Part shown: piece by piece, positions 5,753-57,053 of the stretch
Layout: every line of letters begins with the position of its first letter
Position numbering within the stretch: position 1 is the stretch's first letter
Translations under genes and position numbers: made by a program
NCBI RefSeq assembly: GCF_963921235.1
Contig: NC_086110.1
Span: forward strand, 15,004,001 to 15,068,000
Length of the DNA: 64,000 nt
Source: Mobula hypostoma
Lineage: Eukaryota
Reading direction: 5' to 3'
The notes under the pieces: model-generated
Told to the model about the DNA's origin: nothing
The model's input: only the letters and a program-made list of their open reading frames with translations
The model's database searches: none

Positions 5753-8700
5753 TTGGGGGGTGGGAATCAAATTAAAGAGGCTAGGCGTGAGGAGGTTAGT
5801 TCACAACAGAGGGATGGGAACCAGTGCAGAGAGACAGAGGGGTGTAAAGTGAGCATAGAAGCAAAAAGTACAAAGGAGAAAAGTAAAAGTGGCAGGCCGA
5901 CAAATCCAGGGCAAGCATTAAAAAGGGCCACTTTTCAACATAATTGTACAAGGGCTAAGAGAGTTGTAAAAGAGCGCCTGAAGGCTTTATGTGTCAATGC
6001 AAGGAGCATTCGTAATAAGGTGGATGAATTGAAAGTGCAGATTGTTATTAATGATTATGATATAGTTGGGATCACAGAGACATGGCTCCAGGGTGACCAG
6101 GGATGGGAGCTCAACGTTCAGGGATATTCAATATTCAGGAGGGATAGACATGAAGGAAGGGGAGGTGGGGTGGCGTTGCTGGTTAAAGAAGAGATTAACG
6201 CAATAGAAAGGAAGGACATAAGCCGGGAAGATGTGGAATCGATATGGGTAGAGCTGCGTAACACTAAGGGGCAGAAGACGCTGCTGGGAGTTGTGTACAG
6301 GCCACCTAACAGTGGTAGTGAGGTCGGAGATGGTATTAAACAGGAAATTAGAAATGTGTGCAATAAAGGAACAGCAGTTATAATGGGTGACTTCAATCTA
6401 CATGTAGACTGGGTGAACCAAATTGGTAAAGGTGCTGAGGAAGAGGATTTCTTGGAATGTATGCGGGATGGTTTTTTGAACCAACATGTCGAGGAACCAA
6501 CTAGAGAGCAGGCTATTCTGGACTGGGTTTTGAGCAATGAGGACGGGTTAATTAGCGATCTTGTCGTGAGAGGCCCCTTGGGTAAGAGTGACCATAATAT
6601 GGTGGAATTCTTCATTAATATGGAGAATGACATAGTTAATTCAGAAACAAAGGTTCTGAACTTAAAGAAGGGGAACTTTGAAGGTATGAGACGTGAATTA
6701 GCTAAGATAGACTGGCAAATGACACTTAAAGGATTGACGGTGGATATGCAATGGCAAGCATTTATAGGTTGCATGGATGAACTACAACAATTGTTCATCC
6801 CAGTTTGGCAAAAGAATAAATCAAGGAAGGTAGTGCACCCGTGGCTGACAAGAGAAATTAGGGATAGTATCAATTCCAAAGAAGTAGCATACAAATTAGC
6901 CAGAGAATGTGGCTCACCTGAGGACTGGGAGAAATTCAGAGTCCAGCAGAGGAGGACAAAGGGCTTAATTAGGAAGGGGAAAAAGGATTATGAGAGAAAA
7001 CTGGCAGAGAACATAAAAACGGACTGTAAAAGCTTTTATAGATATGTAAAAAAGAAAAGACTGGTAAAGACAAATGTAGGTCCCCTGCAGACAGAAACAA
7101 GTGAATTGATTATGGGGAGCAAGGACATGGCAGACCAATTGAATAATTACTTTGGTTCTGTCTTCACTAAGGAGGACATAAATAATCTTCCAGAAATAGT
7201 AGGGGACAGAGGGTCCAGTGAGATGGAGGAACTGAGTGAAATACATGTTAGTAGGGAAGTGGTGTTAGGTAAATTGAAGGGATTGAAGGCAGATAAATCC
7301 CCAGGGCCAGATGGTCTGCATCCTAGAGTGCTTAAGGAAGTAGCCCAAGAAATAGTGGATGCATTAGTGATAATTTTTCAAAACTCGTTAGATTCTGGAC
7401 TAGTTCCTGAGGATTGGAGGGTGGCTAATGTAACCCCAATTTTTAAAAAAGGAGGGAGAGAGAAACCGGGGAATTATAGACCGGTTAGCGTAACGTCGGT
7501 GGTGGGGAAACTGCTGGAGTCAGTGATCAAGGATGTGATAACAGCACATTTGGAAAGCGGAGAAATGATCGGACAAAGTCAGCATGGATTTGTGAAAGGA
7601 AAATCATGTCTGACGAATCTCATAGAATTTTTTGAGGATGTAACTAGTAGAGTGGATAGGGGAGAACCAGTGGATGTGGTATATTTGGATTTTCAAAAGG
7701 CTTTTGACAAGGTCCCACACAGGAGATTAGTGTGCAAACTTAAAGCACACAGTATTGGGGGTAAGATATTGGTGTGGGTGGAGAATTGGTTAGCAGACAG
7801 GAAGCAAAGAGTGGGAATAAACGGGACCTTTTCAGAATGGCAGGCGGTGACTAGTGGGGTACCGCAAGGCTCAGTGCTGGGACCCCAGTTGTTTACAATA
7901 TATATTAGTGACTTGGATGAGGGAATTAAATGCAGCATCTCCAAGTTTGCGGATGACACGAAGCTGGGCGGCAGTGTTAGCAGTGAGGAGGATGCTAAGA
8001 GGATGCAGGGTGACTTGGATAGGTTGGGTGAGTGGGCAAACTCATGGCAGATGCACTTTAATGTGGATAAATGTGAAGTTATCCACTTTGGTGGCAAAAA
8101 TAGGAAAACAGATTATTATCTGAATGGTGGCCGATTAGGAAAAGGGGAGGTGCAACGAGACCTGGGTGTCATTATACACCAGTCATTGAAAGTGGGCATG
8201 CAGGTACAGCAGGCGGTGAAAAAGGCGAATGGTATGCTGGCATTTATAGCGAGAGGATTCGAGTACAGGAGCAGGGAGGTACTACTGCAGTTGTACAAGG
8301 CCTTGGTGAGACCACACCTGGAGTATTGTGTGCAGTTTTGGTCCCCTAATCTGAGGAAAGACATCTTTGCCATAGAGGGAGTACAAAGAAGGTTCACCAG
8401 ATTGATTCCTGGGATGGCAGGACTTTCATATGAAGAAAGACTGGATGAACTGGGCTTGTACTCGTTGGAATTTAGAAGATTGAGGGGGGATCTGATTGAA
8501 ACGTATAAGATCCTAAAGGGATTGGACAGGCTAGATGCAGGAAGATTGTTCCTGATGTTGGGGAAGTCCAGAACGAGGGGTCACAGTTTGAGGATAGAGG
8601 GGAAGCCTTTTAGGACCGAGATTAGGAAAAACTTCTTCACACAGAGAGTGGTGAATCTGTGGAATTCTCTGCCACAGCAAACTGTTGAGGCCAGTTCATT

Positions 8701-8785
8701 GGCTATGTTTAAGAGGGAGTTAGATATGGCCCTTGTGGCTACAGGGGTCAGGGGGTATGGAGGGAAGGCTGGTACAGGGTTCTGA
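5753..8785 (+). CDS. CR1 ORF2: apurinic-like endonuclease + reverse transcriptase (intact)
   Basis: NARSI, ITETWL, YRPP, GDFN, SDH (APE); NYRPVS, QHGF, LDFQKAFD, GVPQGSVLGP, FADD (RT). No internal stops; the frame is open from 5732. Confidence 0.95.
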   Translation: MGGGNQIKEARREEVSSQQRDGNQCRETEGCKVSIEAKSTKEKSKSGRPTNPGQALKRATFQHNCTRAKRVVKERLKALCVNARSIRNKVDELKVQIVINDYDIVGITETWLQGDQGWELNVQGYSIFRRDRHEGRGGGVALLVKEEINAIERKDISREDVESIWVELRNTKGQKTLLGVVYRPPNSGSEVGDGIKQEIRNVCNKGTAVIMGDFNLHVDWVNQIGKGAEEEDFLECMRDGFLNQHVEEPTREQAILDWVLSNEDGLISDLVVRGPLGKSDHNMVEFFINMENDIVNSETKVLNLKKGNFEGMRRELAKIDWQMTLKGLTVDMQWQAFIGCMDELQQLFIPVWQKNKSRKVVHPWLTREIRDSINSKEVAYKLARECGSPEDWEKFRVQQRRTKGLIRKGKKDYERKLAENIKTDCKSFYRYVKKKRLVKTNVGPLQTETSELIMGSKDMADQLNNYFGSVFTKEDINNLPEIVGDRGSSEMEELSEIHVSREVVLGKLKGLKADKSPGPDGLHPRVLKEVAQEIVDALVIIFQNSLDSGLVPEDWRVANVTPIFKKGGREKPGNYRPVSVTSVVGKLLESVIKDVITAHLESGEMIGQSQHGFVKGKSCLTNLIEFFEDVTSRVDRGEPVDVVYLDFQKAFDKVPHRRLVCKLKAHSIGGKILVWVENWLADRKQRVGINGTFSEWQAVTSGVPQGSVLGPQLFTIYISDLDEGIKCSISKFADDTKLGGSVSSEEDAKRMQGDLDRLGEWANSWQMHFNVDKCEVIHFGGKNRKTDYYLNGGRLGKGEVQRDLGVIIHQSLKVGMQVQQAVKKANGMLAFIARGFEYRSREVLLQLYKALVRPHLEYCVQFWSPNLRKDIFAIEGVQRRFTRLIPGMAGLSYEERLDELGLYSLEFRRLRGDLIETYKILKGLDRLDAGRLFLMLGKSRTRGHSLRIEGKPFRTEIRKNFFTQRVVNLWNSLPQQTVEASSLAMFKRELDMALVATGVRGYGGKAGTGF

Positions 8786-10284
8786 GTTGGATGATCAGCC
8801 ATGATCATAATAAATGGCGGTGCAGGCTCGAAGGGCCGAATGGCCTACTCCTGCACCTATTTTCTATGTTTCTATGTTTTTCTCGAGGGTAGTTACGAAT
8901 ATTAGAGAATACTGCCTCTGATTGGAATTTATGAATTTAAAACCGAAGTGTTAAAAATTACATGACTGCTATACAAAACCGTGGCTGCACCATGGGATGA
9001 AAGGAAGGACCTATGATCTTAGAAGAGAATACAGCACAGATTTTTAGAGAAATATTTAAAATTAGGGTCTCTATGAAAATTCAAACTTTTGTATTACAGA
9101 ATGTAATTTTCCTCTTCATAAATCGATAAAATACCAGAGCAGCTTATTTTGCCCAATACCATACTGCTTCTCCCAAGTTCCAATTAAATGTACCATTTAC
9201 AATTGTTATCTTCCGGTTTTTAAAAAAATGCATAATTACTCAAGTAAACAGTTTTAATTAGCTTGTTCTGTTTTGCATTTGACTCACTTTGGGAGCAACA
9301 TTTTGAAGCAGCTTTTCATAATTACCACAGATCACTGCATTTACCACAAAAAAATAGTCTGTTCTAAAAAACAAAATTAAACTGTGATGGCAATACTCAA
9401 AGAATCTCTTAAAATAAATATTTCTAAAACTAGCATTCTGTCCAAATTGATGCGCCTACGATGTGGAAAACGACATTCTAGCAATCGGTGATTTTGATAT
9501 TAGAATGAAGACAATAGATGTGCCATGTGCCTCAAATGGCTTTGGGGTGTAAAAGCATCACCACAAAATCCATAATGTAACTTGCATTAAACTAGAACTT
9601 AGTATTATCCTTCGATAACATTTTCTGTGCCTTTTTTATCAGCATACAAACCCTTACATATACAAATACCCTTAGAGTTTGCAAATCTATATGCACGTTT
9701 TCCTTTCAGAGTTAAAACTGTCACTTTAATCTTATCAATACATCTATTCCCATCCATTTAACCATCTACAATAAATTTCTGAAATTGCTTAAGCTAATTG
9801 TTTGGAAACCTCAATGGTTTGGCATCTGGTTTATTCACGTGTAAAATGGGGTCCAGAGTATAAGCAGGATATGGGCTAGAGAGAGGGTCTGGACCAGGTG
9901 TTTTGACAATCTGAAGGTCACCAGGTTTTATTTCCCATTGCCTTGAAATTTGCACTGAAAAGTTATTATACTACTGCGTAATGCATTAAAAAGTTTAAAT
10001 ATAACTATCTGGATCGGAGCATTGGGTTATTAACAGGAGTAACATTGGATAGTGTGGAAAATCTGCTGGTCCCAAGGATGACACGTTATCAGTTTTACTG
10101 TAGTTAAAATTTCCATCCTGTTCTGGAATATAGTCAGTATAAGTATAGAGGCACTTTAAGTTGTTGTAGACATTCACATTTTTGTAGAAGTAAATTCTTC
10201 AAAATGAATGTATTTTTTCTTGCAACACACATCAAAGTTGCTGGTGAACGCAGCAGGCCAAGCAGCATCTCTAGGAAGAGGTGC

Positions 10285-10320
10285 AGTCGACATTTCAGGC
10301 CGAGACCCTTCGTCAGGACT
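10285..10320 (-). ncRNA. Hammerhead motif, inverted-arm copy (GAAATGTC variant)
   Basis: Reverse complement reads AGTC CTGACGA AGGGTCTCGGCCT GAAA TGTC GACT. Confidence 0.65.
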
Positions 10321-10938
10321 AACTGAAGGAAGAGTGAGTAAGGGATTTGAAAGTTGGAGGGGGAGGGGGAGATCCAAAATGATAGGAGAAGACAGGAGGG
10401 GGAGGGATAGAGCCAAGAGCTGGACAGGTGATAGGCAAAAGGGGATACGAGAGGATCATGGGACAGGAGGTCCGGGAAGAAAGACGGGGGGGGGGGACCC
10501 AGAGGATGGGCAAGAGGTATATTCAGAGGGACAGAGGGAGAAAAAGGAGAGTGAGAGAAAGAATGTGTGCATAAAACTAAGTAACAGATGGGGTACGAGG
10601 GGGAGGTGGGGCCTTAGCGGAAGTTAGAGAAGTCGATGTTCATGCCATCAGGTTGGAGGCTACCCAGATGGAATATAAGGTGTTCCTCCAACCTGAGTGT
10701 GGCTTCATCTTTACAGTAGAGGAGGCCATGGATAGACATGTCAGAATGGGAATAGGATGTGGATAAGTGCCAGGAGGGATGCGGATAAGTGCCAGGAGGG
10801 AGATCACTGGGGAGGGATGGGGGGGACGAATGGACAAGGGAGTTGTGTAGGGAGCGATCCCTGCGGAATGCGGAGAGAGGGGGGGAGGGAAAGATGTGCT
10901 TAGTGGTGGGATCCCATTGGAGGTGGCCTCTCTTTGCA

Positions 10939-11451
10939 TTTCCCTCCCCCCCCTCTGCATTCCACAGGGATCGCTCCCTACACAACTCCCTTGTCCATTC
11001 GTCCCCCCCATCCCTCCCCACTGATCTCCCTCCTGGCACTTATCCGTGTAAGCGGAACAAGTACTACACATGCCCTTACACTTCCTCCCTTACCACCATT
11101 CAGGGCCCCAAACAGTCCTTCCAGGTGAGGCAACACTTCACCTGTGAGTCGGCTGGGGTGATATACTGCGTCCGGTGCTCCCGATGTGGCCTTTTATATA
11201 TTGGCGAGACCCGACGCAGACTGGGAGACCGCTTTGCTGAACATTTATGCTCTGTCCACCAGAGAAAGCAGGATCTCCCAGTGGCCACACATTTTAATTC
11301 CACATCCCATTCCCATTCTGACATGTCTATCCACGGCCTCCTCTACTGTAAAGATGAAGCCACACTCAGGTTGGAGGAACCACACCTTATATTCCGTCTG
11401 GGTAGCCTCCAACCTGATGGCATGAACATCGACTTCTCTAACTTCCGCTAA
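10939..11451 (+). pseudogene. C-terminal part of PLE ORF: linker + GIY-YIG (Uri) endonuclease
   Basis: FHRDRSLHNSLV...FTCESAGVIYCVRCSRCGLLYIGETRRRLGDRFAEH...HF...GMN, typical of PLE endonucleases; RT absent (5' truncated). Confidence 0.9.
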
Positions 11452-11747
11452 GGCCCCACCTCCCCCTCGTACCCCATCTGTTACTTATTTTTATGCACAC
11501 ATTCTTTCTCTCACTCTCCTTTTTCTCCCTCTGTCCCTCTGAATATACCTCTTGCCCATCCTCTGGGTCCGGCCCCCCCCCTGTCTTTCTTCCCGGACCT
11601 CCTGTCCCATGATCTTCTCGTATCCCCTTTTGCCAATCACCTGTCCAGCTCTTGGCTCCATCCCTCCCCCTCCTGTCTTCTCCTATCGTTTTGGATCTCC
11701 CCCTCCCCCTCCAACTTTCAAATCCCTTACTCACTCTTCCTTCAGTT

Positions 11748-11783
11748 AGTCCTGACGAAGGGTCTCGGCCTGAAACGTCGACT
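11748..11783 (+). ncRNA. Minimal type-I hammerhead ribozyme motif (intact core)
   Basis: AGTC-CTGACGA-AGG(gtctcgg)CCT-GAAA-C-GTC^GACT: stem I AGTC/GACT, core CUGAnGA...GAAA, GUC triplet, palindromic ACGT stem III. Confidence 0.8.
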
Positions 11784-12714
11784 GCACCTCTTCCTACAGA
11801 TGCTGCTTGGCCTGCTGCGTTCACCAGCAACTTTGATGTGTGTTGCTTGAATTTCCAGCATCTGCAGAATTCCTGTTGTTTGTATTTTTTCTTCCTTATA
11901 TTCCTTCTATAAACAGAACCACAAGAGAGTAAAATCTCTTCTTTAGGAATCAGATTTTGCATCGAATTACTTAATCATTGTATCAGGTGAAGATATCAGA
12001 ATTTCTAAAGCAGTCTCTTCTATACCCCACTTTATAACTTGGTGATTTTGCCATCCTGTAGGAAGGATAGCTCTTTAAGTTTTCCCAAAGCTACACCAAC
12101 TGTTCAGAAAGTGACTAGAAATGACGTCTGTCTCCTAAACAAAGGGATAATGCAAAGTAAGTTTAATCACTTATATAATCAGTGCAGACAGGGAAAATTG
12201 CCCAGTTTGCAATGGAACTGGTTATAACAGGTTCATTCTCTCATTTGCTTCAATATTTCTGGAAACTTTCAATTGAACATATAAACCCAGGGACAAATAT
12301 AAATTAATCAAGCTCTTATCAAAGTACAATTTTTCACTTTGGGATATACACAGCTAGCTATTAGGATGTCTGTGCTGTGCAATCCCAACACTTCTTGGCT
12401 TTAAGATCAAGAGAAGAGGGAAGCTTGCCATTTATAAATTTGTGCTATTTTTGCAGACCAACTAATAAATTCAGCAGGAATCTCTCCACCTGCACTAGCC
12501 ATGATCTCGATCACACAGATATTATTCTCTTTCTGACAGAAGAGAAGGAAAAGCTGGAATGAGAGCATCCCCGAGCACACAGCAGGAAATATATTGTCTG
12601 GAATAACCTGGTTGCTGAGTATAGATGGTACGAATAGGGACAAATGGTTCCTTTCGCCCCTTCCATTTTCTTTTCTTAAGGGGTGTGGGGAGGAATTAAT
12701 CCTCAATTGACTAG

Positions 12715-14379: not shown

Positions 14380-14622
14380 AATTACTGCAAATGTTGCAAC
14401 TCTTGAACGGAAAATAATGAAACAGTCAACAGACCAAGAGGCATCCAGAGAGTAACAGAGTTAACATTTCACGACAATGAGGTTTTATCGGTCTTGATTG
14501 AGAGTCTCAGTCTGAAATGATGATTGTTATTCCTCTCCTTAGATGCTGCCTGACTTGCTGAGTTCCTCCAGCATTGTGTCTGTTGTTCTGGATTTCCAGC
14601 ATCAGCAGAATCTCTTGTGTTG
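14380..14622. mobile_element. Old degenerate PLE terminal-repeat copy, partly inverted (similar relic ~16925-17140)
   Basis: agatgctgcctgacttgctgagttcctccagcatt...gatttccagcatc matches the PLE 3' end; a reverse-complement-like half lies upstream. Confidence 0.6.
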
Positions 14623-21235: not shown

Positions 21236-21426
21236 CTGCGAAGGAGATACAGGAACACTTGATGATCTAAACACTTTTAAAATATACAGCAAGGAAAGTT
21301 ATATAACACTATCATATTCATGCTAACTTTGAATTTTCCTTGTGTGATTTTCTCCCCAGACTGGGGTATTTGTGGATATTGTGTACAGACATGTTGAGGT
21401 TCAGAAGGCACATTACTTATTACTCA

Positions 21427-22514
21427 ATCACGAGGAATTCTGCAGATGCTGGAAATTCAAGCAAAACACATCAAAGTTGCTGGTGAACGCAGCAGGCCAG
21501 GCAGCATCTCTAGGAAGAGGTACAGTCGGCTTTTCGGGCCGAGACCCTTCGTCAGGACTAACTGAAGGAAGAGCTAGTAAGAGATTTGAAAGTGGGAGGG
21601 GGAGGGGGAGATCCAAAATGATAGGAGAAGACAGGAGGGGGAGGATGGAGCGAAGAGCTAGACAGTTGATTGGCAAAAGGGATATGAGAGGGAGTACCTG
21701 GGATCCTCAGAAGGTCCAAATTGAGAGGCTCGAAAACGAATCCTAAAGCTAACTGGAGTAAGTTGGCGGCGGAGGCACATTCCAAGAAAGGATATATGGC
21801 TGTGATAGCGAGGCTGAGTCAAAATGTGGTTGAAAAGTTGAAGAGCCGAAGAAATTCCAGAAGGGGAGCAGTGAGAGATGGTTTCACTGAACTTCCGTCG
21901 AAGCGGAGATTTAAACTTCTTCAGTGTAGGCATCACCCGAAGAGGCTTTGCAGTAGTGAATTTAAAAATGCAAACACGAGGAGTTCTGCAGATGCTGGAA
22001 ATCCTCATGTTTGCATTTTTAAATTCACTACTGTGAAGCCTCTTCGGGTGATGCCTACACTGAAGAAGTTTAAATCTCCGCTTCGACGGAAGTTCAGTGA
22101 AACCATCTCTCCCTGCTCCCCTTCTGGAATTTCTTCGGCTCTTCAACTTTTCGACCACATTTTGACTCAGCCTCGCTATCACAGCCATATATCCTTTCTT
22201 GGAACGTGCCTCCGTCGCCAACTTACTCCAGTTAGCTTTAGGATTCGTTTTCGAGCCTCTCAATTTGGACCTTCTGAGGATCCCAGGTACTCCCTCTCAT
22301 ATCCCTTTTGCCAATCACCTGTCCAGCTCTTGGCTCCATCCCTTCCCCTCCTGTCTTCTCCTATCATTTTGGATTCCACCCCCCAACTTTCAAATCTCTT
22401 ACTATCTCTTCCTTCAGTTAGTCCTGACGAAGGGTCTCGGCCCGAAACGTCGACTGTACCTCTTCCTAGAGATGCTGCCTGGCCTGCTGCCTTCACCAGC
22501 AACTTTGATGTGTG
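21427..22514 (-). mobile_element. Internally deleted Penelope-like element, ~530-bp-arm palindrome, in last PHAF1 intron
   Basis: Arms ~21461-21982 and ~22002-22516 are reverse complements; tail ~21427-21460; imperfect TSD ttacttatt(a/g)ctc at 21413-21425 and 22515-22527. Each arm fuses a putative PLE ORF N-terminus (HISFLG.CLRRQLTPVSFRIRF) to the 3' repeat. Confidence 0.88.
22420..22455 (+). ncRNA. Minimal type-I hammerhead ribozyme motif (intact core)
   Basis: AGTC-CTGACGA-A-GGG(tctcgg)CCC-GAAA-C-GTC^GACT. Confidence 0.8.
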
Positions 22515-22659
22515 TTACTTATTGCTCGGTAGCTTTACAGAAATCTCCACAATATAATAACTACATCCAATGCCAGTGGGCAGCTGGCACTTGAGCAAGT
22601 ACATTATATTGTGGAGAGCTCTGGTAGGTAAAGTAACCATGTGGTAAGGAAGACACAGG

Positions 22660-22960
22660 AAACCGCAGATTATCATCTTCCTGATTTGTTAGATTTAGCT
22701 TTTGTAGACCCCTCCCCTACTTCCCACCCATTTGTCTGCTTTCACTTATCACCCACATACCTTTGCCTCCTAGCAGCACCCATCCTCACCATTCTTCACC
22801 CATCCTTGGCCCACCCATCACCCTCTGGCCTGTCTCACTTGGCCCCCTCTCCTTTTTTATGCTATCTTCCCACTGAGTCCTGGTGCAGGGTCTTGACCTG
22901 AGACGTTGACAGACGCTGCTTGACCTGCTGAGTTCCTCCAGCAGTTTTGTTTTTTTGCTG
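22660..22960 (+). mobile_element. Old PLE 3'-repeat copy with degenerate hammerhead
   Basis: agtcctggtgcagggtcttgacctgagacgttgac...gacctgctgagttcctccagca. Confidence 0.65.
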
Positions 22961-28039: not shown

Positions 28040-28387
28040 ATTCGTGGTCCATCCTCCTTCCCTTTCTCCCACGGTCCACTCTTCTCTCCTATCAGATTCC
28101 TTCTTCTTCCGCCCTTTACCTCTTCCACTTATCACCGCCCAGCTTCTCACTTCATTCCCCCCCCCCCCACCAAACTTGGTTTCACCTATCACCTGCTAGC
28201 TTGTACTCCTTCCTCTCCCCTCACCTTAGTCTGGCTTTGGCTCCCTTCCTTTCCAGTCCTATGAAGGCTCTCAGCCTGAAATGTCAACTGTTTTTTTATC
28301 TCCGTAAATGCAGCCTGACCTGCTGAGTTTCTCCAGCATTTTGTGCGTGTTGTTCTGGATTTCCAGCATATGCAAAATCTCTTGTTT
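28040..28387 (+). mobile_element. PLE 3'-repeat solo copy with degenerate hammerhead (28255-28289)
   Basis: agtcct-atgaaggctctcagcctgaaatgtcaact plus the PLE terminus; possible TSD atgaaac at 28033-28039 and 28388-28394. Confidence 0.7.
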
Positions 28388-31099: not shown

Positions 31100-33046
31100 T
31101 ATGTATCTAATCTGTCTAAGTCCTTCTGTAGCCTCTCTACTTCCTGAAAATTACCGGTCCCTCCATCTGTCTTCATATCGTCTGCAAACATTTCAACAAA
31201 GCCATCAACTCCATCATCCAAATCATTGACATATAATGTAAAAAAAATTGGACCAGAGACCCCTGTGAAACACAAGTCATTGGTAGCCAGCCAGAAAAGG
31301 CTCCCTTTATTCCCACTGTTGCCCATCAGCCCCTGCTCTATCCATGCTTGAATCTTTCCTGTAATACCATGGGCTTGTGGCTTGCATACCAGCCTCATGT
31401 GTGGCACTTTGTCAAAGGCCTTCTGAAAACCCAAGTACACCACATCAACTGATGTTTTTTTGTCTATCCTGCTTGTTGTTTCTAATAACCTACGAGCTCC
31501 CTCTAATGTAGAACCATATCCTGGAAGCTATGAATGTTGTCAAGGAAGATTTCTACTCTGAATTTAAACCCTGACCTGCATTCCCAATACTGAAGCCATG
31601 TTGAAGAATGAAACAACCATAAAGGTAGAAAGTGATCAAGATGGACTTAGGCAGGTCGTGATTTAGTAATTTATGCTCTCTCAGCTGCTGAAATCATGAT
31701 CAAAACTTCTGTTCTCTGGACTTGATTCTTATGATCTATAGAACGGACCTCTTATTTTCCACCCATCATAAAGCTTTGCTGCCTACATCCCACTTTGTAC
31801 TAGGTCCTGATCATCTATCAGCCACCCTATCCACTGGTACCCACATCAGCATTTAATGAAGTTCAAACACCTATATCTTTGGTCTTTCTCCAACTACTCC
31901 AACAATCTAGCAAGAGTTTTGATTTATTTCATTTTTTTTGTGCATCTCAAAACCTTCCTCCAGCCAACCACTGAAGAATACCTTCAGCTAATGTGGAACC
32001 AGATTCAGAAATTCCTTCTCCAAACCTATCTGTGCAACTTCCTCCTCCTCAAACCCTACCTTGTAGCAAGATTATAATCACTACTTCATGGGTGCAGATG
32101 ACTTCTGTTGGTGTTTCTATGAATTACCATAGTAGTTTTCCCAGTTGAAACCCCGAGATAAATAAAGGACCTACTTTATTCGCCAAATACATTTACATGT
32201 ATTAGGAATTTGCTGTGGTGTGTTGGTGCAACATGCAACAAAAATATTTATATAATTGTTTCTTTAAAATTGTTAAAAATGAACTTAGAACAGATATGGA
32301 ATAAAATATGCATAAATTCAAAAGTACAAGCATGTATTTACAATGTAAACAGCTTTTATAAAAAATGGTTTGAAGTGCTTACAGTGCAGTGTAGTGGCTG
32401 AGGTAAGAGACAGAGGGAGGTTGAGGGAGCTACCTAGAATGGTTTATCAGATTAACTGCTTGCGGGGTTAGAAATGCTTTTGATGGAGTGAAGTTTTTGT
32501 ATTAATAGCTCTGCTTTACAATGCACATAACATTCATTGATAGGTTATTTTCATAACCAAGTAACCCCTGCAGTTACTTCAATGTTAGAGTTCCTCTCAT
32601 CATGGAACCTGGGTAAGCAGAAGTGAGGGGAACAGGGTACATGAAATCCAAAAACAATTATGTTGGTTGGGCAGAGCAGACAATTGCCAAATATATACGG
32701 AAACCAGCAGTGTGCTATAATTAGATTCCAAAACAAATTTGTATGTACAGTGGTTTCTGATTAATTGAGCTATTGGTTAATCAGGGCAGCTGCTTATTTG
32801 GGACAACTTTTAAAGAACAAAAACTAATTGAGAAAATAGCCAGGATTCCCTTCATTTATTTGGACACAATTCCGCTTAATTGGGACAGGAGACTGTTGCC
32901 GAACAGTTTCTAACTAGCGTCTGTCACATCCACTTGCATAGAAAGACACTACACCATGTTTTGAGCAAACAGTTTTTAAATAGTGTCAATTACATGCGCC
33001 TGTGATCAAAAAGTAGTGATTTTTCTCAATTACAGTTAGCAAGGAG

Positions 33047-33121
33047 GCAACATACATCAAAGTTGCTGGTGCAACTTTGATGTATGTTGCTTGAATTTCC
33101 AGCATCTGCAGAATTCCTGTT
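33047..33121 (+). mobile_element. Minimal PLE fold-back insertion (20-bp perfect hairpin + tail)
   Basis: gcaacatacatcaaagttgc-tggt-gcaactttgatgtatgttgc followed by ttgaatttccagcatctgcagaattcctgtt; 15-bp TSD gttagcaaggaggca at 33035-33049 and 33122-33136. Confidence 0.9.
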
Positions 33122-33136
33122 GTTAGCAAGGAGGCA

Positions 33137-33963: not shown

Positions 33964-34060
33964 GTCCTGAAAAAGGTTCTTGGCCCAAAAAGTTGACCAT
34001 TTATTAATTTCCATTGACGCTGCCTAGCCTGCTGAGTTCCTCCAGCATTGTGTGTGCATT
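33964..34060 (+). mobile_element. PLE 3'-repeat fragment starting at the hammerhead
   Basis: gtcctgaaaaaggttcttggcccaaaaagttgac...cctgctgagttcctccagcatt; absent from the sister Tigger copy. Confidence 0.7.
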
Positions 34061-34548
34061 GCATTGTATGAAGGCAGGCAGCCCATTATTTACACTAGGT
34101 GTCTGTGCTAATTTTGTTCACTTACTCTCAATCAAATGAACACAGCAGCAAACACTGGATAAATTCCCCTGTTGGTAACTATAAGGAACTAATACAGTTA
34201 TATAGTAGCGTATTAGTATAGGCAGGCCACTTACATAAAACTTTGGCTAATTGGGGCAGCCGCTTATTGGGCCAAAATGTACTGGTCCTAATGTGTCCCA
34301 ATTAACCAGAATCCACTGTTAATGGTAACTGCTTAATGGTTTTGATCTTTTTAAAAATTTCCCACCAGATGTTTCCTTTGTCTCATCATTTGGGAACAAT
34401 GCCACACCAAGCAGTTCATTTAATCATTCAGCTTCAATAATTTCTTCCTAGAACATCTGTTTTGCATTCTCTAGAATTATCATCTTTCCAAGGCAAAAAA
34501 AACCTGATCATCTGCCACCCCCAGCTGTCCCACAGAAAGGGATTTCAC

Positions 34549-34592: not shown

Positions 34593-34924
34593 CTGGCAAA
34601 AACAAATAAAATTACAGACAGTTAATTATATATTTGGAGTTATTCGCTCTGCTGAGTAACTAAGTCCACCCTGCCAATCCCATGCTTACGAGAGAAAATG
34701 CTAAAACTGGATGCAATACAGGAAATTAAATGGTGTTGCTAGGAGAGCTACAATCTCGTAGCAGCAGAAACTCTGGTCCTGTCCGTGTGGCTGTATCATT
34801 ACACCTACACTTTTACTTCATCTCCAAAAAAGCTTTCTGCTGGGGTGGGAATAATCTACTGGAGAAAGGGGAAATGTTTAACTCGTATTGTCTCTAGAAT
34901 TAATCAAAGTTAATCCTAGAGTAC

Positions 34925-35034
34925 AAAACGTCGACTGTACTTCTTCCTATAGATGCTGCCTGGCCTGCTGCGTTCCACCAGCATTTTGTGCGTGTTGCTT
35001 GAATTTCCAGCATCTGCAGATTCTCTCGTGTTTG
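34925..35034 (+). mobile_element. PLE 3'-repeat fragment starting inside the hammerhead (AAACGTCGACT)
   Basis: Close match to 11773-11880. Confidence 0.8.
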
Positions 35035-38105: not shown

Positions 38106-38205
38106 TTAGAGTCAGCTCACAAGTCTGCATGTTGGCGAAGCAGAGAACATCACACTTTATTCAAGCGAGTACGTATTGATTATTCAAGTAAGTTAATAAA
38201 ACCTT

Positions 38206-38991
38206 AGTAACACACACAAAATGCCTGAGAAACTCAGCAGGCCAGGCAGCATCTACGGAAAAAAGTACAGTTGACGTTTTGGGCTGAAATCGTTCGGCAG
38301 AACTGGAGAAAAAAAGCCGAAGAGTACATTTGAAAGGTGGGGGGAGAGGAGATAGAAATGCCAGGCAATAGGTGAAACCTGGAGAGGGAGGGATGAAGCG
38401 AAGAGCTAGGAAGTTGATTGGTGAAAGAGACAGAAGACCATGGAAGAAAGAAGAAAGGTGAGGGTGTGCAGGAGCAGTAGAGGGAGGTGATGGGCAGGCA
38501 AGGACAAAGGAAGGACGAGGGGATGGGAAATAGTGAAGGGGGGAGGTGGAGGCATTACTGGAAGTTTGAGAAATCGGTGTTCATGCCATCAGGTTGGAGG
38601 CCATGGATGGACATATCGGAATGTGAATGGGAAGTGGAATAATGGGTGGGCACTGGGAGATCCGCTTGTTCTGGTGGACATTCCCTCTACACCTACACAC
38701 CTTCCCCTTTCTTCTTTCCTCCATGGCCACTGTCTCTTTCACCAATCAACTTCCTAGCTCTTTGCTTCATCTCTTCCCATCCAAGTTTCACCTATCGCCT
38801 GGAGTTTCTCTCTCCCTTCCCCCCACCTTTCCAATCGACTCCTCGGCTATTTTTTCTCCAGTTCTGCTGAAGGGTCTCAGCCCGAAACGTTGACTGGACT
38901 TTTTTTTCCCATAGATGCTGTCTGGCCTGCTGAGTTCCTCCAGCATTTTGTGTGTGTTGCTCGGATTTCCAGCATCTGCAGACTCCCTCTT
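38206..38991 (+). mobile_element. Older PLE fold-back insertion
   Basis: Inverted arms (~38206-38460 vs ~38700-38960); unpaired tail 38961-38991; 14-bp TSD gttaataaaacctt at 38192-38205 and 38992-39005; degenerate hammerheads at ~38268-38305 (-) and ~38860-38895 (+). Confidence 0.85.
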
Positions 38992-39114
38992 GTTAATAAA
39001 ACCTTGTTTACTTACATTGCGGACTTACCAGTGCTACGCATCATGAAAAGACTTCAAATAAACATACATCCCTCAGCAAATGGAAACTGGGTTCGCAATA
39101 CCAGGCTATTGATA

Positions 39115-39314
39115 AACACAAGAGATTCTGCAGATGTTGGAAATCCAGAAGAATACACAGAAAATGCTGGAGGATCTCAGTAGATCCAGCAACATCAATG
39201 GATCGGACCCGAGCAACACACACAGCGGTCTCGACCTGAAACCTTGACTGTTTCTAACTCTCCATAGATGCTGGCTGACCTGCTAAGTTCTTCCAGCATT
39301 ATGCGTGTGTTGCT
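39115..39314 (-). mobile_element. Short PLE fold-back insertion
   Basis: Tail on the left, inverted copy on the right; TSD caggctatt(g/a)ata at 39102-39114 and 39315-39327. Confidence 0.75.
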
Positions 39315-40519
39315 CAGGCTATTAATACACCAGCTTTAGGTAAACCTTAGCAGTAAATGAAAACTGGCAACGTTATCGTACAGAAGCTGCGTCTGACAGT
39401 ATGTGCTAATATTGGAAAAATTAGTACGAATGAAAGTAAATTCCTTCTGCTTTGTTCTAACAATCCTGGAATTCAGTTAAATCTGTGGATAGCTCAAAAT
39501 AAATTATAACTTTGTTTTATGTGTTTCCTTACCAACAGCTTAGATATCAGATTCTGCAACTAACTTTTCACAATCAGGCCAACAAGTGCAGTGCGTTTAA
39601 TTAAATCAAATGGTGTTTCAATAAGTGATTGTCATCATTAATTATTTTGCAACTGTAGTCTGTAATCCTTTCATCTTTTTCAATGCAAGTCACAAATTAA
39701 TGATCCTCACCATAGAAATAGTTTGGTGTGTGAATGGTGTGTATCACAGGCTCTGTGAGATAACGTGCTAAGATTTCTGCGGAGCTTCCCAGTAGCTTTG
39801 TGGCCAGAGCCAGATAGGACCAGGTGTTCAAAGGTCAGTGCAAAATTACAGGCTCTAATCTGAAATGACTGTACAGCAAGTGCAAGTTGGATCAGTGTAC
39901 AGAATAATAGATAAAATATTTACTTATGCTTTACCCTATCACACTAATGGCACTGCTTCCAACTCGTTTCTCCTCTTCTTTCACAAACCAAACCATCTAA
40001 AAACTCTGATGCTTATAATATAATCAATACCAAGTCCTACTCTATAGCAACTCCATGCTTATTAATTTACATTGATCTACCTCTGCAATTTAACCAAATT
40101 TAATATTTTTTCATCATGTTCAAATATGCCTACAATAGTCTCTTTCCTCCCAATGTAGCAACCAGAGATGAGTTCAAATTCCACCACTGCTGCTTTGGAA
40201 ATTTAAATTCAACTAAACATTCATTCCCTTCACTGCACCAAGAGTGGTAGCATTTACCATCTACAAAATGCATTCGACATCCATAGTTCAATGTACACAC
40301 GTTACCAAAAACTATCTTGAGATTCATTTCCATGCAGGCATTCACAGGAAGTAAATAAACGTAATGAAATTCTAGAAAAACCATACATAAACAAAGAAAG
40401 AACGAGAAACAACTAATGTGCAAAAGACACTGCAAATAAAAATAATACTGTGAACTTGAGTTGTAAGAGAGTCCTTGAAAGTCAGTCTGTAAGTTGTAGA
40501 ATTAGCCCAGAGTGGTGGA

Positions 40520-45199: not shown

Positions 45200-45545
45200 C
45201 AATTTTTCCTCTTTCCACAGGTACTGCCTGATATTCTAGGTGTCTTAAGCATTGTTTTCTGTTTTAGGTTCCCAGCAACTGCTACGCTCTGCATCCTTTT
45301 TTTTTGCTGCAATCACCATTTACCCATTAAGCAGAAGGTTCAGTAGCATTGTGTTTGCCAAAGTTCCCTCTCTCCTTCTCTCTCTCTTCCCCCCCCCCCA
45401 ACACTTTGCAACTGGAAACATACTTGTTTCCTCAATTTTGCTGTCCTGATGTGGGATTATTAGCCTGAAACATTAACTCTGCCTTTCTCTCCAGAGATGC
45501 TGCCTGGCCTGCTGAGTATTTCCAGTACATTCTGCTGTAATTTAA
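45200..45545 (+). mobile_element. Two old PLE 3'-repeat relics
   Basis: gtcctgatgtggga...cctgaaacattaac...gatgctgcctggcctgctgagtatttccag. Confidence 0.55.
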
Positions 45546-54619: not shown

Positions 54620-56921
54620 CCAGAACCACGTTTAAAAGAAAAAGACATAAAAGATGTGAAAGAAACAGTTTTGTGGACCATCTGAAGAATGTCACCTGTC
54701 AAATAGTGCTGAACTATTTTCAAAGGATATATATGTGAACTTTGAATTAGACAACTGCACAACCTTAAACATAATAAGGTGCAATAGAGCTAGCAGAACA
54801 TAAAACAGAGCAAGAGGGTAGAGCAGAATCGATGGATGAGTATGAAACATAAGTATTTGGGACATTAACAAGCAAAAAAGATCATACTGTGATAGAAGGA
54901 AAACTTTTGACAGAATTTGCTTCAAGGCTTAAGAAAATCTGCTAGAGCTCCATAGTGAAAATATAACAAAGGCAATAACCACGTTTGCTATACCCATAAT
55001 AACATATTCTTTTGGCATAATATCTTGGTCTGAAACCGATCTAGAAAACTTACAAAGAAAAATAAGAAATGAAGTGACAAATCTTAGAAATCACTATGTA
55101 CACTCGAACACACTTAGATTAACACTACCTAGGGCAGAAGGAAGAAGAAGAATAATAGACATAAAAATTTACACAACAAACAGATAACATCTAAGGATAT
55201 ACTTTCATCAATGAAAACAAGATTCAGCACTCCAGGTGAACATATGCAATTCTGATAAAGTAGCACACACCACTAAACTTAAACGAAAGCAGAACCCAGA
55301 CAAATGAAGAAACTATCACTATATCCATGGAAGACATCCCCACGATCTGAGCAGACTAGATGTCAACGAGGACGTGTGGAACACCTGGCTCAGATATTGG
55401 AGACATCTTCCCAGAAACAGGGGGGTTCCTTGTGGCAATACAGGACCAGGTGGTTAACACCAAAAATTATCAAAAATACATAGTAAAGGACCAACAAGTT
55501 CAAGACAATTAATGTAGAAAGTGCCAAGAGAAACCAGAAACAATCCAACACTTTAGAGGATCCTGCAGCAGTTTAACTCAATCTGATTACTTACACAAGC
55601 ACAATTAAGAGGCAAACATTATGCACCAAAATCTTGCTTTAAAATACAAACTCATAAAAGACACCATACTTCACTATAAAAACAAGCCTGATCCAGTTTT
55701 AGAGTCAGAGTCATTCAAATTATACTACAACCAATTCATTAATATGGTTAGGACAATCCATAATAACCGTCTGGATATAATAATACAGGAAAACAAGCAA
55801 GAACTCACAGAACTCAGTAAGTGTAAAACACAAGAAATATGCTGAATTACAAACAGTAAAAAGAGGAAATTGAAACATTGGCCCGATAGTAACATCTACA
55901 ACTGGTATCATCCCAAAGTCATTACATAATAGCATTAAACAATTAGGCCTACACAGGAATATTTATCTAAATCTCCAGAAAGCCACAATACTAAACACCA
56001 CTAGAATAATCTGAAAGCTCTTAGCAATTGAGAAATGAGTGAACTTGGCTATGCTCATACCACAGGTTTTACCAGCTTAAGCTGAAAAAAATACAGCCAT
56101 AATAATAATAATAATAATAAGTAATATATATCTAGAACATGAGAGAGTGAATCCATAGGTTGTGGTAACAGTTCAGTGATGGGGCAAGTGAAGTTACCCC
56201 CTCTGGTTCAAAGCCTGATGATTGAGGGGCAATAACTGTTCTTGAACCTGGTGGTGTGAGCCCTGAGGCTCCCACACCTTCCTCCTGATGGAAACAGTGA
56301 GAAGGGAGCATGGCCTAGATAGTGGGGTCCTTACTGATGAATGCTGACTTCCTGCAACACCGCTCTGTGTAGATGTGCTCAACGGTGGGAAAGCTTTGCC
56401 TGTGATGGACTGGGCTGTACCCATGACTTTTTGTTGGTTTTTCTGCTCAAGGGCATTGGTGTTTCAATACCAGTCACACAGCTAAAGAAGTTTGTCAAAG
56501 ATTAAGATGACAAGCTGAACCTTTGCAAACTTCTAAGAAAGTAGAGATGCTGGCATGCTTCCTCCACAATGGCACTTTGCAGGACCCAGAACAGATCCCC
56601 TGAAATAATAATGGGGATCTGAAAGTGAGGAAATGAAGAATACAGTTGCACGAGGAGGTATTGAGACCAAGATCTTGAAGCATTGATTCGTTTTGAGGGA
56701 ATGATAGTATTGAATGCCAAGCTGTGGTCAATGAAGAGCATCTTGATGTATGTATCTTTGCTGTCCAGGGTTGAATGAAATGGCATCTACCATTGACCTG
56801 TTATGACAGCAGGTGAATTGGAGCAGATCCAAGTCACTTCTCAGGCAGGAGTTGATATGCTTCATCACCAACCTTTCAAAGCACTTCATTGTTGTAATGT
56901 AAGTGCTACTAGACAATAGTC

Positions 56922-57053
56922 CTGTTGAAGGGTTTCAGCCTGAAACGTAAACTGTACTTTTTTCCCCATAGAGGCTGCCTGGCCTGCTGAGTTCCTCCAG
57001 CACTTTGTCTGTGTTGCTTGGATTTCTAGCATCTGCAGATTTTCTTTTGTTTG
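56922..57053 (+). mobile_element. PLE 3'-repeat fragment with degenerate hammerhead inserted in Rex1 RT
   Basis: Interrupts NDY|CLVALT; 6-bp duplication atagtc at 56916-56921 and 57054-57059. Confidence 0.8.

What the first reader, a model, noticed from the sequence alone, without database searches (positions are those of the whole stretch)
11748..11783. Minimal hammerhead ribozyme in the terminal repeat of an abundant Penelope-like family
Seen: AGTC-CTGACGA-stemII-GAAA-C-GTC-GACT is intact at 11748-11783 and 22420-22455. Variant or decayed copies lie at ~10285, 21524, 22876, 28255, 33964, 34925, 38268, 38860, 39225, 45443 and 56918. Stem I (AGTC/GACT) closes the core, and stem III is reduced to the palindrome ACGT. 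Known: Penelope-like elements carry such minimal type-I hammerheads, which are thought to cleave as dimers. Inference: one of the most frequent short repeats in this window, which looks like a SINE, is a ribozyme-bearing PLE terminus, i.e. a retrozyme-like non-autonomous family driven by the GIY-YIG/RT element at 10.2-11.9 kb.
Basis: partly seen in the sequence, partly recalled or inferred. Interest (0 to 1): 0.85.

Follow-up and report, generated by a model that had tools for sequence, protein, structure and literature searches.

The report
Hammerhead motif in Penelope-element tails
A 36-base sequence with every hallmark of the minimal hammerhead ribozyme known from Penelope-like retrotransposons sits near the 3' end of a very abundant devil-ray retrotransposon; this is an expected feature of that element class, and most copies here are dead, truncated tails, not a separate SINE-like family.

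Summary
It matches the minimal hammerhead of Penelope-like elements (PLEs): both catalytic boxes, an extra A after A9, a G10.1-C/U11.1 pair, a 4-5 bp helix I, and helix III reduced to the palindrome ACGU. It lies 297 nt downstream of a GIY-YIG open reading frame, and 67 and 103 nt upstream of the family's two alternative 3' ends. Four independent full-length PLE relatives carry the same architecture at the same place with different helix sequences, two of them with the known U3-A8 core variant.

The SINE/retrozyme reading is mostly not supported. The short copies have variable 5' ends (5' truncation), come as inverted pairs with one tailed arm, and never form tandem arrays. The 10.2-11.9 kb element has no reverse transcriptase and is itself a dead truncated pair. 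One element (21421-22559) is an internally deleted, non-autonomous PLE.

Self-cleavage is inferred, not shown. The predicted lowest-energy fold is an inactive hairpin, Rfam models miss the motif, and only assembled contigs were available.

This is a known kind of element. The scan has already noted it many times elsewhere in this genome (404 notes).

The parts
11748..11783 (+). Intact minimal hammerhead, copy A+. Helix I 5' strand 11748-51; core CUGACGA 11752-58; bulged A 11759; helix II 11760-63/11768-71 (closing pair G-U) with loop CUCG; GAAA 11772-75; C-G-U 11776-78; C17 at 11779 (predicted cut after it); helix I 3' strand 11780-83.
22420..22455 (+). Intact minimal hammerhead, copy B+, with the canonical G10.1-C11.1 pair; predicted cut after C22451.
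10281..10316 (-). Hammerhead of the inverted arm A-. The core is intact; C15.2>U changes the palindrome ACGU to AUGU.
21520..21555 (-). Hammerhead of arm B-, broken in helix III (C15.2>A, U16.1>C).
10915..11451 (+). Remnant of the PLE ORF: the RT-EN linker (CX4CX2C motif with the middle Cys mutated to Tyr) plus the GIY-YIG endonuclease, ending at the stop codon. No reverse transcriptase.
11452..11747 (+). 3' untranslated region (pseudo-LTR part) between the stop codon and the hammerhead. 11697-11747 is a variable pyrimidine-rich linker.
11784..11846 (+). Segment from the hammerhead to the first (tail-less) 3' end at 11846. It contains the conserved box CAGAUGCUG (11797-11805), which can pair with the tail.
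11847..11882 (+). 36-nt 'tail', present on one arm of each inverted pair. 11882 is the second 3' end, used genome-wide.
10193..10914 (-). Inverted, 5'-truncated, tail-less partner arm of element A (447 bp at 97.5% identity to the + arm, with an internal deletion of about 240 bp).
21421..22004 (-). Element B, minus arm: tail copy at its 5' end (palindrome centre), PLE N-terminal coding stub, hammerhead tail, 3' tail.
22005..22520 (+). Element B, plus arm (tail-less). 22048-22281 encodes the PLE N-terminal motif, joined directly to the last ~285 bp that carry the hammerhead. This is an internally deleted, non-autonomous PLE.
38201..38998 (.). Older inverted pair C (arms 38201-38477 minus, 38687-38998 plus). 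Both hammerheads share A6>C; the minus arm keeps an endonuclease C-terminal remnant.
14491..14618 (+).
22860..22951 (+). Decayed tail fragment.
28130..28382 (+). Old tail copy; G5 of the core is deleted.
33044..33126 (.). Minimal inverted pair made of the last 29 and 56 nt only, with no hammerhead, flanked by a 12-15 bp target duplication.
33964..34062 (+). Decayed tail that starts at the hammerhead.
34924..35033 (+). Young tailed copy, 5'-truncated inside the GAAA box, so it lacks the core.
39117..39316 (.). Old inverted pair (39117-39199 minus, tailed; 39227-39316 plus, truncated inside helix II).
45389..45517 (+). Decayed tail (A9>U).
56866..57052 (+). Old tailed copy (A6>U).

Best explanation
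The 36-nt motif is a genuine member of the minimal type-I hammerheads carried by Penelope-like elements. It belongs to the last ~270 nt of a Neptune-like PLE family that is extremely abundant in this devil-ray genome.

Shown: the motif sits on the sense strand, 297 nt after the GIY-YIG stop codon and 67/103 nt before the two alternative 3' ends of inserted copies (without and with the 36-nt tail). In the source RNA the tail runs straight on into the N-terminal coding region, so the hammerhead marks the pseudo-LTR/ORF junction, as in the Anolis element PAc and in the relative L001.

Inferred: in transcripts that hold two sense copies (tandem or pseudo-LTR arrangements), or between two transcripts, the ACGU palindromes pair to build helix III of a double hammerhead that cuts after C17 (11779, 22451). 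This probably needs help from the element's own protein, because the naked monomer prefers an inactive hairpin. Cleavage would trim read-through or multimeric transcripts just upstream of the ORF start.

Nearly all copies in the window are by-products of retrotransposition. They are 5'-truncated, often laid down as inverted pairs with one tailed arm, and they carry the motif only because it lies close to the 3' end. They then decay, fastest at its four CpGs.
For: Motif: exact descriptor matches at 11748 and 22420 against 0.00 expected. A structural descriptor gives 3 hits in the window against 0.05 in random sequence.

All features that Cervera & de la Pena (PMC4209133) list for PLE min-HHRs are present: an extra nucleotide between A9 and G10.1, the G10.1-C11.1 pair, the palindromic 15.2-16.2 positions, and a 4-5 bp helix I.

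Element identity: GIY-YIG ORF. 5842 protein relatives, including proteins of 816-927 aa with RVT_1 plus GIY-YIG. A CX4CX2C linker in the relatives. Inverted 5'-truncated partner arms and a 36-nt tail on one arm in five pairs, as described for PLEs (PMC8557442).

Positional homology: four independent full-length relatives (L001, L003, L006, L007) carry the same architecture in their non-coding flanks, on the sense strand. That is 5 hits in 28 kb against 0.01 expected. L001 has one in each pseudo-LTR, with its cut ~69 nt before the ATG and ~74 nt before the end of the repeat.

The helices differ between lineages but always pair: 9 pairs, 100% paired, 7 with changes on both sides, and C3-G8 replaced by U3-A8 in two lineages.

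Within the ray genome (41,089 DNA contigs): the only variants at 6% or more inside the motif are transitions at three of its four CpGs (7-12%) and U/C at 11.1 (28%), which keeps the pair. Flanking non-CpG sites vary at 19-57%. Alignments of diverged subfamilies break exactly at 11748-50 and 11783-84.

Genome-wide 3' ends fall at 11845-47 and 11882-83.
Against: No catalysis was observed. Only assembled contigs were available, so RNA ends at the cut site could not be seen.

Rfam hammerhead models give no hit, even at E<=10. They also miss the motifs in the other PLEs.

The predicted monomer fold is an inactive rod in which GACG of the core pairs with CGUC (-11 to -12.9 kcal/mol). It is no more stable than shuffled sequence (z 0.03). 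The double-hammerhead secondary structure (-11.5/-16.7) is weaker than two such rods.

Helix II has 4 bp, shorter than the 6-8 bp typical of min-HHRs.

Both arms of pair C share A6>C, so a template with a broken core was still inserted.

In Anolis PAc the hammerhead is dispensable for insertion in vitro, and no RNA-seq ends map to its cut site (PMC11167929).

The count of variable non-CpG positions alone (1 of 28 inside the motif against 7 of 56 beside it) is not statistically decisive.

The cross-lineage helices were collected with a descriptor that demands pairing, so the 100% pairing is partly by construction.
Confidence: 0.75

Rival explanations
1. The conserved 36-nt block is a structured RNA element without catalysis, for example a hairpin bound by the PLE protein near the reverse-transcription start. 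Its likeness to a hammerhead would then be a relic.
For: The lowest-energy fold is a 13-bp interrupted hairpin, not the three-way junction. Min-HHRs cleave poorly in vitro (PMC4209133). The PAc hammerhead needs protein and is not required for insertion (PMC11167929). Other conserved blocks and a 9-bp long-range helix lie just downstream.
Against: The extra pairs of the rod (G5-C17, A6-U16.1, C7-G16.2, G8-C15.2) are not kept in L001, L006 or L007, whereas the hammerhead core nucleotides are. The C3-G8 to U3-A8 exchange is a tertiary pair specific to the hammerhead fold.
Confidence: 0.15
2. The short copies are a distinct SINE- or retrozyme-like non-autonomous family that borrows the PLE terminus.
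For: Element B joins a ~300-bp N-terminal stub directly to the hammerhead tail. Its minus arm reads tail-unit-tail, more than one unit. A 2026 preprint argues that animal retrozymes derive from PLE pseudo-LTRs.
Against: The 5' ends of the copies fall at about ten different positions, two inside the ribozyme. Arms A and C keep endonuclease coding sequence. There are no head-to-tail arrays and no tRNA-like heads. The motif is the minimal PLE form, not the canonical loop-loop type I of retrozymes (PMC7229834). A protein search with the B fusion found no second B-type copy.
Confidence: 0.08
3. A chance resemblance multiplied by transposition, with no constraint on the motif.
For: Repetition within the window comes from copying, not from independent origin. 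Most copies are decayed.
Against: The motif matches at every invariant hammerhead position plus four PLE-specific idiosyncrasies. The same architecture sits at the same place in four PLE lineages at 39-49% protein identity, 5 hits against 0.01 expected. The only common non-CpG variant inside the motif keeps its base pair.
Confidence: 0.02

Closest known systems
Minimal hammerheads (min-HHR) of metazoan Penelope-like elements (Cervera & de la Pena 2014, PMC4209133)
   Same: Catalytic boxes CUGANGA and GAAA, H17, an extra nucleotide between A9 and G10.1, the G10.1-C11.1 pair, a helix III reduced to a palindrome, and a 4-5 bp helix I. Location in the terminal repeat region. Many solitary copies from truncated elements, and pairs 100-700 bp apart on opposite strands.
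   Different: Helix II has only 4 bp with a tetraloop (6-8 bp is typical). The closing pair is G-U in copy A. The host is a batoid ray, a group not named in that paper. Copy number appears far higher (17 fragments in 64 kb), but this was not measured genome-wide.
Poseidon element PAc of Anolis carolinensis (Frangieh et al. 2024, PMC11167929)
   Same: The hammerhead lies at the pseudo-LTR/ORF junction. There are two adjacent 3' ends bounding a 30-40 nt tail, some 70-100 nt downstream of the cut. The template RNA continues past them into the ORF.
   Different: In PAc the ORF starts inside the hammerhead. Here, as in L001, the ORF seems to start about 70 nt after the cut. The ray element has the Neptune-type CX4CX2C linker. 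No biochemistry exists for it.
Non-LTR retrozymes of animals (Cervera & de la Pena 2020, PMC7229834; Li et al. 2026 preprint)
   Same: Type-I hammerhead topology, a need for dimers in vertebrates, and a likely dependence on PLE enzymes.
   Different: Retrozymes are head-to-tail arrays of 150-450 bp units with canonical loop-loop hammerheads, expressed as circular RNAs. Here the copies are dispersed or inverted, 5'-truncated, and carry the minimal form.
HDV-like ribozymes at the 5' ends of R2 and other LINEs
   Same: A self-cleaving ribozyme placed just upstream of a retrotransposon ORF, thought to trim co-transcripts.
   Different: A different ribozyme class and a different retrotransposon class. 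Those ribozymes act efficiently as single copies.

Membership tests
PLE minimal hammerhead (min-HHR) | Catalytic boxes CUGANGA and GAAA, with U16.1 and a non-G at position 17 | tested here: met
   Exact in A+ and B+.
PLE minimal hammerhead (min-HHR) | One unpaired nucleotide between A9 and G10.1 | tested here: met
   A at 11759/22431. The same A is present in L001, L003, L006 and L007.
PLE minimal hammerhead (min-HHR) | G10.1-C11.1 closing pair of helix II | tested here: met
   G-C in B+ and G-U in A+. Genome-wide U/C is 72/28% at 11771.
PLE minimal hammerhead (min-HHR) | Helix III reduced to a palindrome (15.1-16.1) with no loop, allowing a dimer | tested here: met
   ACGU at 11775-11778. The relatives have ACGU, AAUU and AGCU.
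PLE minimal hammerhead (min-HHR) | Sense-strand location in the terminal or pseudo-LTR region of a PLE | tested here: met
   297 nt after the GIY-YIG stop. Same place in relatives, and in both pseudo-LTRs of L001.
PLE minimal hammerhead (min-HHR) | Self-cleavage, as a dimer or with protein help | not testable with these tools
   Only contigs were available, with no pile-up of ends. Energy calculations do not favour the active fold.
Canonical type-I hammerhead (Rfam Hammerhead_1 and relatives) | Match to the Rfam covariance models | tested here: not met
   No hit at the gathering threshold or at E<=10. The models also miss the motifs of four other PLEs, so the miss says little.
Penelope-like element, Neptune-like | Single ORF with a telomerase-like RT followed by a GIY-YIG endonuclease | tested here: inconclusive
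   GIY-YIG is present (21.9 bits, just under the Pfam cut-off of 22.6). There is no RT anywhere in the window. Full-length relatives have both domains.
Penelope-like element, Neptune-like | Extra Cys motif (CX2-5CxxC) in the RT-EN linker | tested here: met
   CX4CX2C in all 12 aligned relatives. Copy A has the middle Cys mutated to Tyr. The assignment to Neptune rather than Nematis rests on the vertebrate host and is an inference.
Penelope-like element, Neptune-like | 5' truncation, an inverted 5'-truncated partner copy, and a 30-40 bp tail at one end | tested here: met
   Five inverted pairs, each with one tailed arm; the tail is 36 nt.
Non-LTR retrozyme | Head-to-tail tandem repeats of 150-450 bp units, each with a hammerhead | tested here: not met
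   No such array in the window.
Non-LTR retrozyme | Abundant circular RNAs of unit length | not testable with these tools
   Contigs carry no such information.
SINE | A fixed 5' end with a pol III-type head (tRNA, 5S or 7SL) | tested here: not met
   Variable 5' ends, no tRNA-like sequence, no Rfam hit.

The most novel reading that the evidence does not exclude
Element B (21421-22559) may be one copy of a ~0.55-kb non-autonomous PLE family: an N-terminal coding stub fused to the hammerhead tail. Its minus arm reads tail-unit-tail, which means it was copied from a multimeric or circular RNA. That would make it a dispersed, minimal-hammerhead counterpart of a retrozyme, a living intermediate between autonomous PLEs and non-LTR retrozymes. 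By naive extrapolation from this window, the genome may hold 10^5-10^6 hammerhead-derived tails.
Probability: 0.15. Interest if true: 0.55.

Novelty: new member of a known kind. Interest (0 to 1): 0.3.

Why it matters
It extends the known link between Penelope-like elements and minimal hammerheads to a batoid ray with a very large, recently active family. That gives plenty of material for asking what the ribozyme does: cut-site ends, the dependence on dimers or protein, and whether broken cores still transpose. It also corrects the annotation. Repeats that look like a SINE are truncated PLE tails, and some are exonised into predicted host proteins. The principle itself has been in the literature since 2014.

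Tried and rejected
Rfam at the gathering threshold and at E<=10: no hammerhead hit. Rejected as evidence against, because the same models miss the motifs of a textbook pseudo-LTR-ORF-pseudo-LTR relative.

Raw DNA reads of two 2026 runs (organisms E and F): no read laid, so they gave no read-level variant profile.

RNA ends at the cut site: only contigs were available, so there is no verdict.

Summed contig depth as a measure of conservation: partly rejected. The peak over the motif is confounded by the geometry of the stretch. In the wide stretch the 3'-most block (11808-11844) is deeper than the motif, as 5' truncation predicts. Only the local troughs on either side of the motif and the alignment break-points are used as evidence.

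Rod-hairpin alternative: considered, then rejected on cross-lineage data.

An ORF start at the ATGs 11800 or 11836: not conserved across subfamilies, or followed by a stop in the tail, so left open.

A second B-type copy was sought by protein search and in earlier notes: none found, which does not show absence.

Earlier notes on full-length tandem elements: nothing.

Full report
**Observation**

The sequence at 11748-11783 reads helix I 5' strand AGUC, core CUGACGA, one extra A, helix II GGGU/GCCU around loop CUCG, GAAA, C-G-U, C17, then helix I 3' strand GACU. The copy at 22420-22455 is the same except for C instead of U at 11.1. An exact search with the 36-nt descriptor finds these two places and nothing else, with 0.00 expected in shuffles. 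The looser core pattern gives 7 matches with up to 2 mismatches against 0.29 expected.

A profile of the surrounding ~270 nt finds 17 fragments of the same tail in the window.

In the alignment only A+ and B+ are fully intact. A- differs by C15.2>U. B- has lost the A15.1-U16.1 pair. Two copies are truncated inside the motif. The rest have core-breaking changes, many of them CpG transitions.

**What the element is**

Upstream of copy A lies an open frame (10915-11451) that matches the GIY-YIG domain, just under the Pfam cut-off. An exhaustive protein search gave 5842 relatives. In the proteins of 816-927 aa the query aligns to the C-terminus, and those tested carry RVT_1 plus GIY-YIG. That is the architecture of Penelope-like elements.

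All aligned relatives have a CX4CX2C motif in the linker before the endonuclease. Copy A has its middle Cys mutated. According to PMC8557442 this extra motif marks the Neptune and Nematis clades. Neptune is the likely one in a vertebrate, but that is an inference.

tblastn with twelve relatives finds no PLE reverse transcriptase anywhere in the window. The 1010-aa RT at 5753-8785 is an unrelated LINE with an AP endonuclease.

Element A is a head-to-head pair of 5'-truncated copies meeting near 10914. Its arms are 97-98% complementary, and the plus arm is 36 nt longer at its outer end. The same design recurs four more times: inverted arms, one ending at the position of 11846, the other carrying a 36-nt tail to the position of 11882. 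Contigs from public runs of two ray species confirm both ends genome-wide. Depth falls to zero after 11882, and junctions to unrelated sequence pile up at 11845-47 and 11882-83.

High 5' truncation, an inverted truncated partner and a 30-40 bp tail at one end are the published signature of PLE insertions (PMC8557442). The tail has been traced to two internal start sites of reverse transcription in the Anolis element PAc (PMC11167929).

**Is the motif the PLE hammerhead?**

Cervera and de la Pena (PMC4209133) list four features that emerged from their minimal hammerheads beyond the search descriptor:
- families rich in compensatory changes;
- a G10.1-C11.1 pair;
- palindromic 15.2-16.2 positions.

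They also describe a short helix I of 4-5 bp, and pairs of motifs 100-700 bp apart on opposite strands. Compensatory changes appear in the between-lineage comparison below; the other features are all present here.

To get evidence that does not depend on this genome, I fetched contigs encoding seven full-length relatives at 39-49% protein identity. I scanned them with a structural descriptor. Four of the seven carry a motif of the same architecture, always on the sense strand and in non-coding flanks. That is 5 hits in 28 kb against 0.01 expected in random sequence of the same composition. The same descriptor gives 3 hits in the window against 0.05 expected.

L001 is a textbook pseudo-LTR-ORF-pseudo-LTR element with one motif in each repeat. 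Its cut site lies about 69 nt before the ATG and about 74 nt before the end of the downstream repeat. In the ray the two 3' ends lie 67 and 103 nt after the cut.

The centre of palindrome B shows a tail copy running straight on into sequence that encodes the conserved PLE N-terminal motif. So in the source RNA the order is hammerhead, tail, ORF start, as in L001 and close to PAc.

Across the five lineages (six sequences) all nine pairs tested are always formed, and seven show changes on both sides. These include the C3-G8 to U3-A8 exchange already described for schistosome PLEs. One caveat applies. The relatives' motifs were collected with a descriptor that requires pairing, so the 100% pairing is partly by construction. 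The weight lies in the enrichment, the constant position and strand, and the different helix sequences.

**Constraint within the ray family**

About 41,000 DNA contigs of one ray run lie on 11696-11835. Inside the motif, the variants reaching 6% are transitions at three of the four CpGs (7-12% each). The only other one is U/C at 11.1 (28% C), which switches G-U to G-C. Non-CpG sites just outside vary at 19-57% (11725, 11732, 11733, 11740, 11785, 11797). Several hundred contigs of diverged subfamilies align only from 11748-50 onward or only up to 11783-84, exactly the outer ends of helix I.

This evidence is suggestive rather than decisive. The count of variable non-CpG sites (1 of 28 inside against 7 of 56 outside) is not significant alone. 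The depth peak over the motif is confounded by the geometry of the stretch. In one search the 3'-most block is deeper, as 5' truncation predicts. The motif is one of several conserved blocks separated by variable linkers.

**How it probably works**

The active fold is not what the naked RNA prefers. The monomer's lowest-energy structure is a rod in which GACG of the core pairs with CGUC, and it is no more stable than shuffled sequence. The secondary structure of a double hammerhead built through the ACGU palindrome is weaker than two such rods.

This agrees with the literature. Min-HHRs cleave weakly and only as dimers or with an extended helix III. The PAc hammerhead cleaves only with the element's protein present, is not needed for insertion in vitro, and leaves no RNA-seq ends at its cut site. 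In the window, both arms of pair C share A6>C, so a template with a broken core was still inserted.

My reading is therefore a conserved, dimer- or protein-assisted ribozyme that trims multimeric or read-through transcripts at the pseudo-LTR/ORF junction. Its position and identity are shown. Catalysis and its role are inferred.

The rival reading is a non-catalytic protein-binding hairpin. It is weakened because the rod's extra pairs are not kept in L001, L006 or L007, while the hammerhead core is.

**The SINE/retrozyme inference**

The copies start at about ten different positions of the tail, two of them inside the ribozyme. Arms A and C keep endonuclease coding sequence. There are no head-to-tail arrays, no tRNA-like heads and no Rfam match. 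They are truncated PLE insertions, which is also how the 2014 paper explained its solitary motifs.

Retrozymes, as defined in PMC7229834, are tandem arrays of 150-450 bp units with canonical type-I hammerheads, expressed as circles. That definition is not met here.

One element is different. In B, about 300 bp encoding the PLE N-terminal motif are joined directly to the last ~285 bp. This makes it an internally deleted, non-autonomous PLE. Its minus arm has a tail at both ends. I could not establish whether it represents a family. A protein search with the fusion found only the separate parts.

**Novelty and context**

Hammerheads in PLE termini have been known since 2014. Rays are not named in that paper, and a 2026 preprint sampled a single chondrichthyan. 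Earlier notes of this scan name the genome as a devil ray, and 404 of them mention hammerhead and Penelope together. So the scan has found this many times on other pieces of the same genome.

The finding is a sound, well-placed new member of a known kind. The extras worth keeping are the very high density (17 fragments in 64 kb), the clean match to the internal-initiation model, and the deletion derivative B.

Noticed in passing
window 21421-22559: Near-perfect palindrome whose arms are an internally deleted PLE: an N-terminal coding stub (22048-22281) fused to the hammerhead tail. The central loop (22007 down to 21977 on the minus strand) is a tail copy followed directly by the N-terminal coding region.
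   Followed up: partly
window 11797-11805 with 11856-11864: The conserved box CAGAUGCUG just after the hammerhead is perfectly complementary to CAGCAUCUG in the tail. It pairs at 7-9 of 9 positions in all 8 tailed copies, with one compensatory C-G to U-A change in copy 39117. The helix brackets the first 3' end (11846) and may correspond to the stem-loop where PAc starts reverse transcription.
   Followed up: partly
proteins P0152, P0153: The translation of the hammerhead tail (VSPDEGSRPETS...) sits inside a predicted STARD3NL isoform X3 of Mobula hypostoma and an uncharacterised Mobula birostris protein. These are exonised or mis-annotated PLE tails, which would carry an uncleaved hammerhead in an mRNA model.
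   Followed up: partly
window 5753-8785: Intact 1010-aa LINE ORF2 (AP endonuclease plus RT), unrelated to the PLE.
   Followed up: no
window 33035-33136: Minimal inverted insertion made of only the last 29 and 56 nt of the tail, flanked by a clean 12-15 bp target duplication. It shows the fold-back step needs no hammerhead in the copied part.
   Followed up: partly
window 10193-11885: Arms about 700 bp long and 97-98% complementary. Any transcript through the locus would form a long double-stranded hairpin, a plausible source of small RNAs against the family.
   Followed up: no
window 11847-11850 and equivalent positions: In the frame that continues into the N-terminal coding region, young tails start with a TGA codon, whereas older tails have TGG or CGG. 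The position of the true start codon of the family remains open.
   Followed up: partly
window 63136-63748: A 30-bp minisatellite, 20.5 copies, 79% matches.
   Followed up: no
L001 1120-1156 and 5071-5107; L006 2975-3011: PLE hammerheads from metagenome-derived contigs that use the U3-A8 core variant in place of C3-G8.
   Followed up: yes
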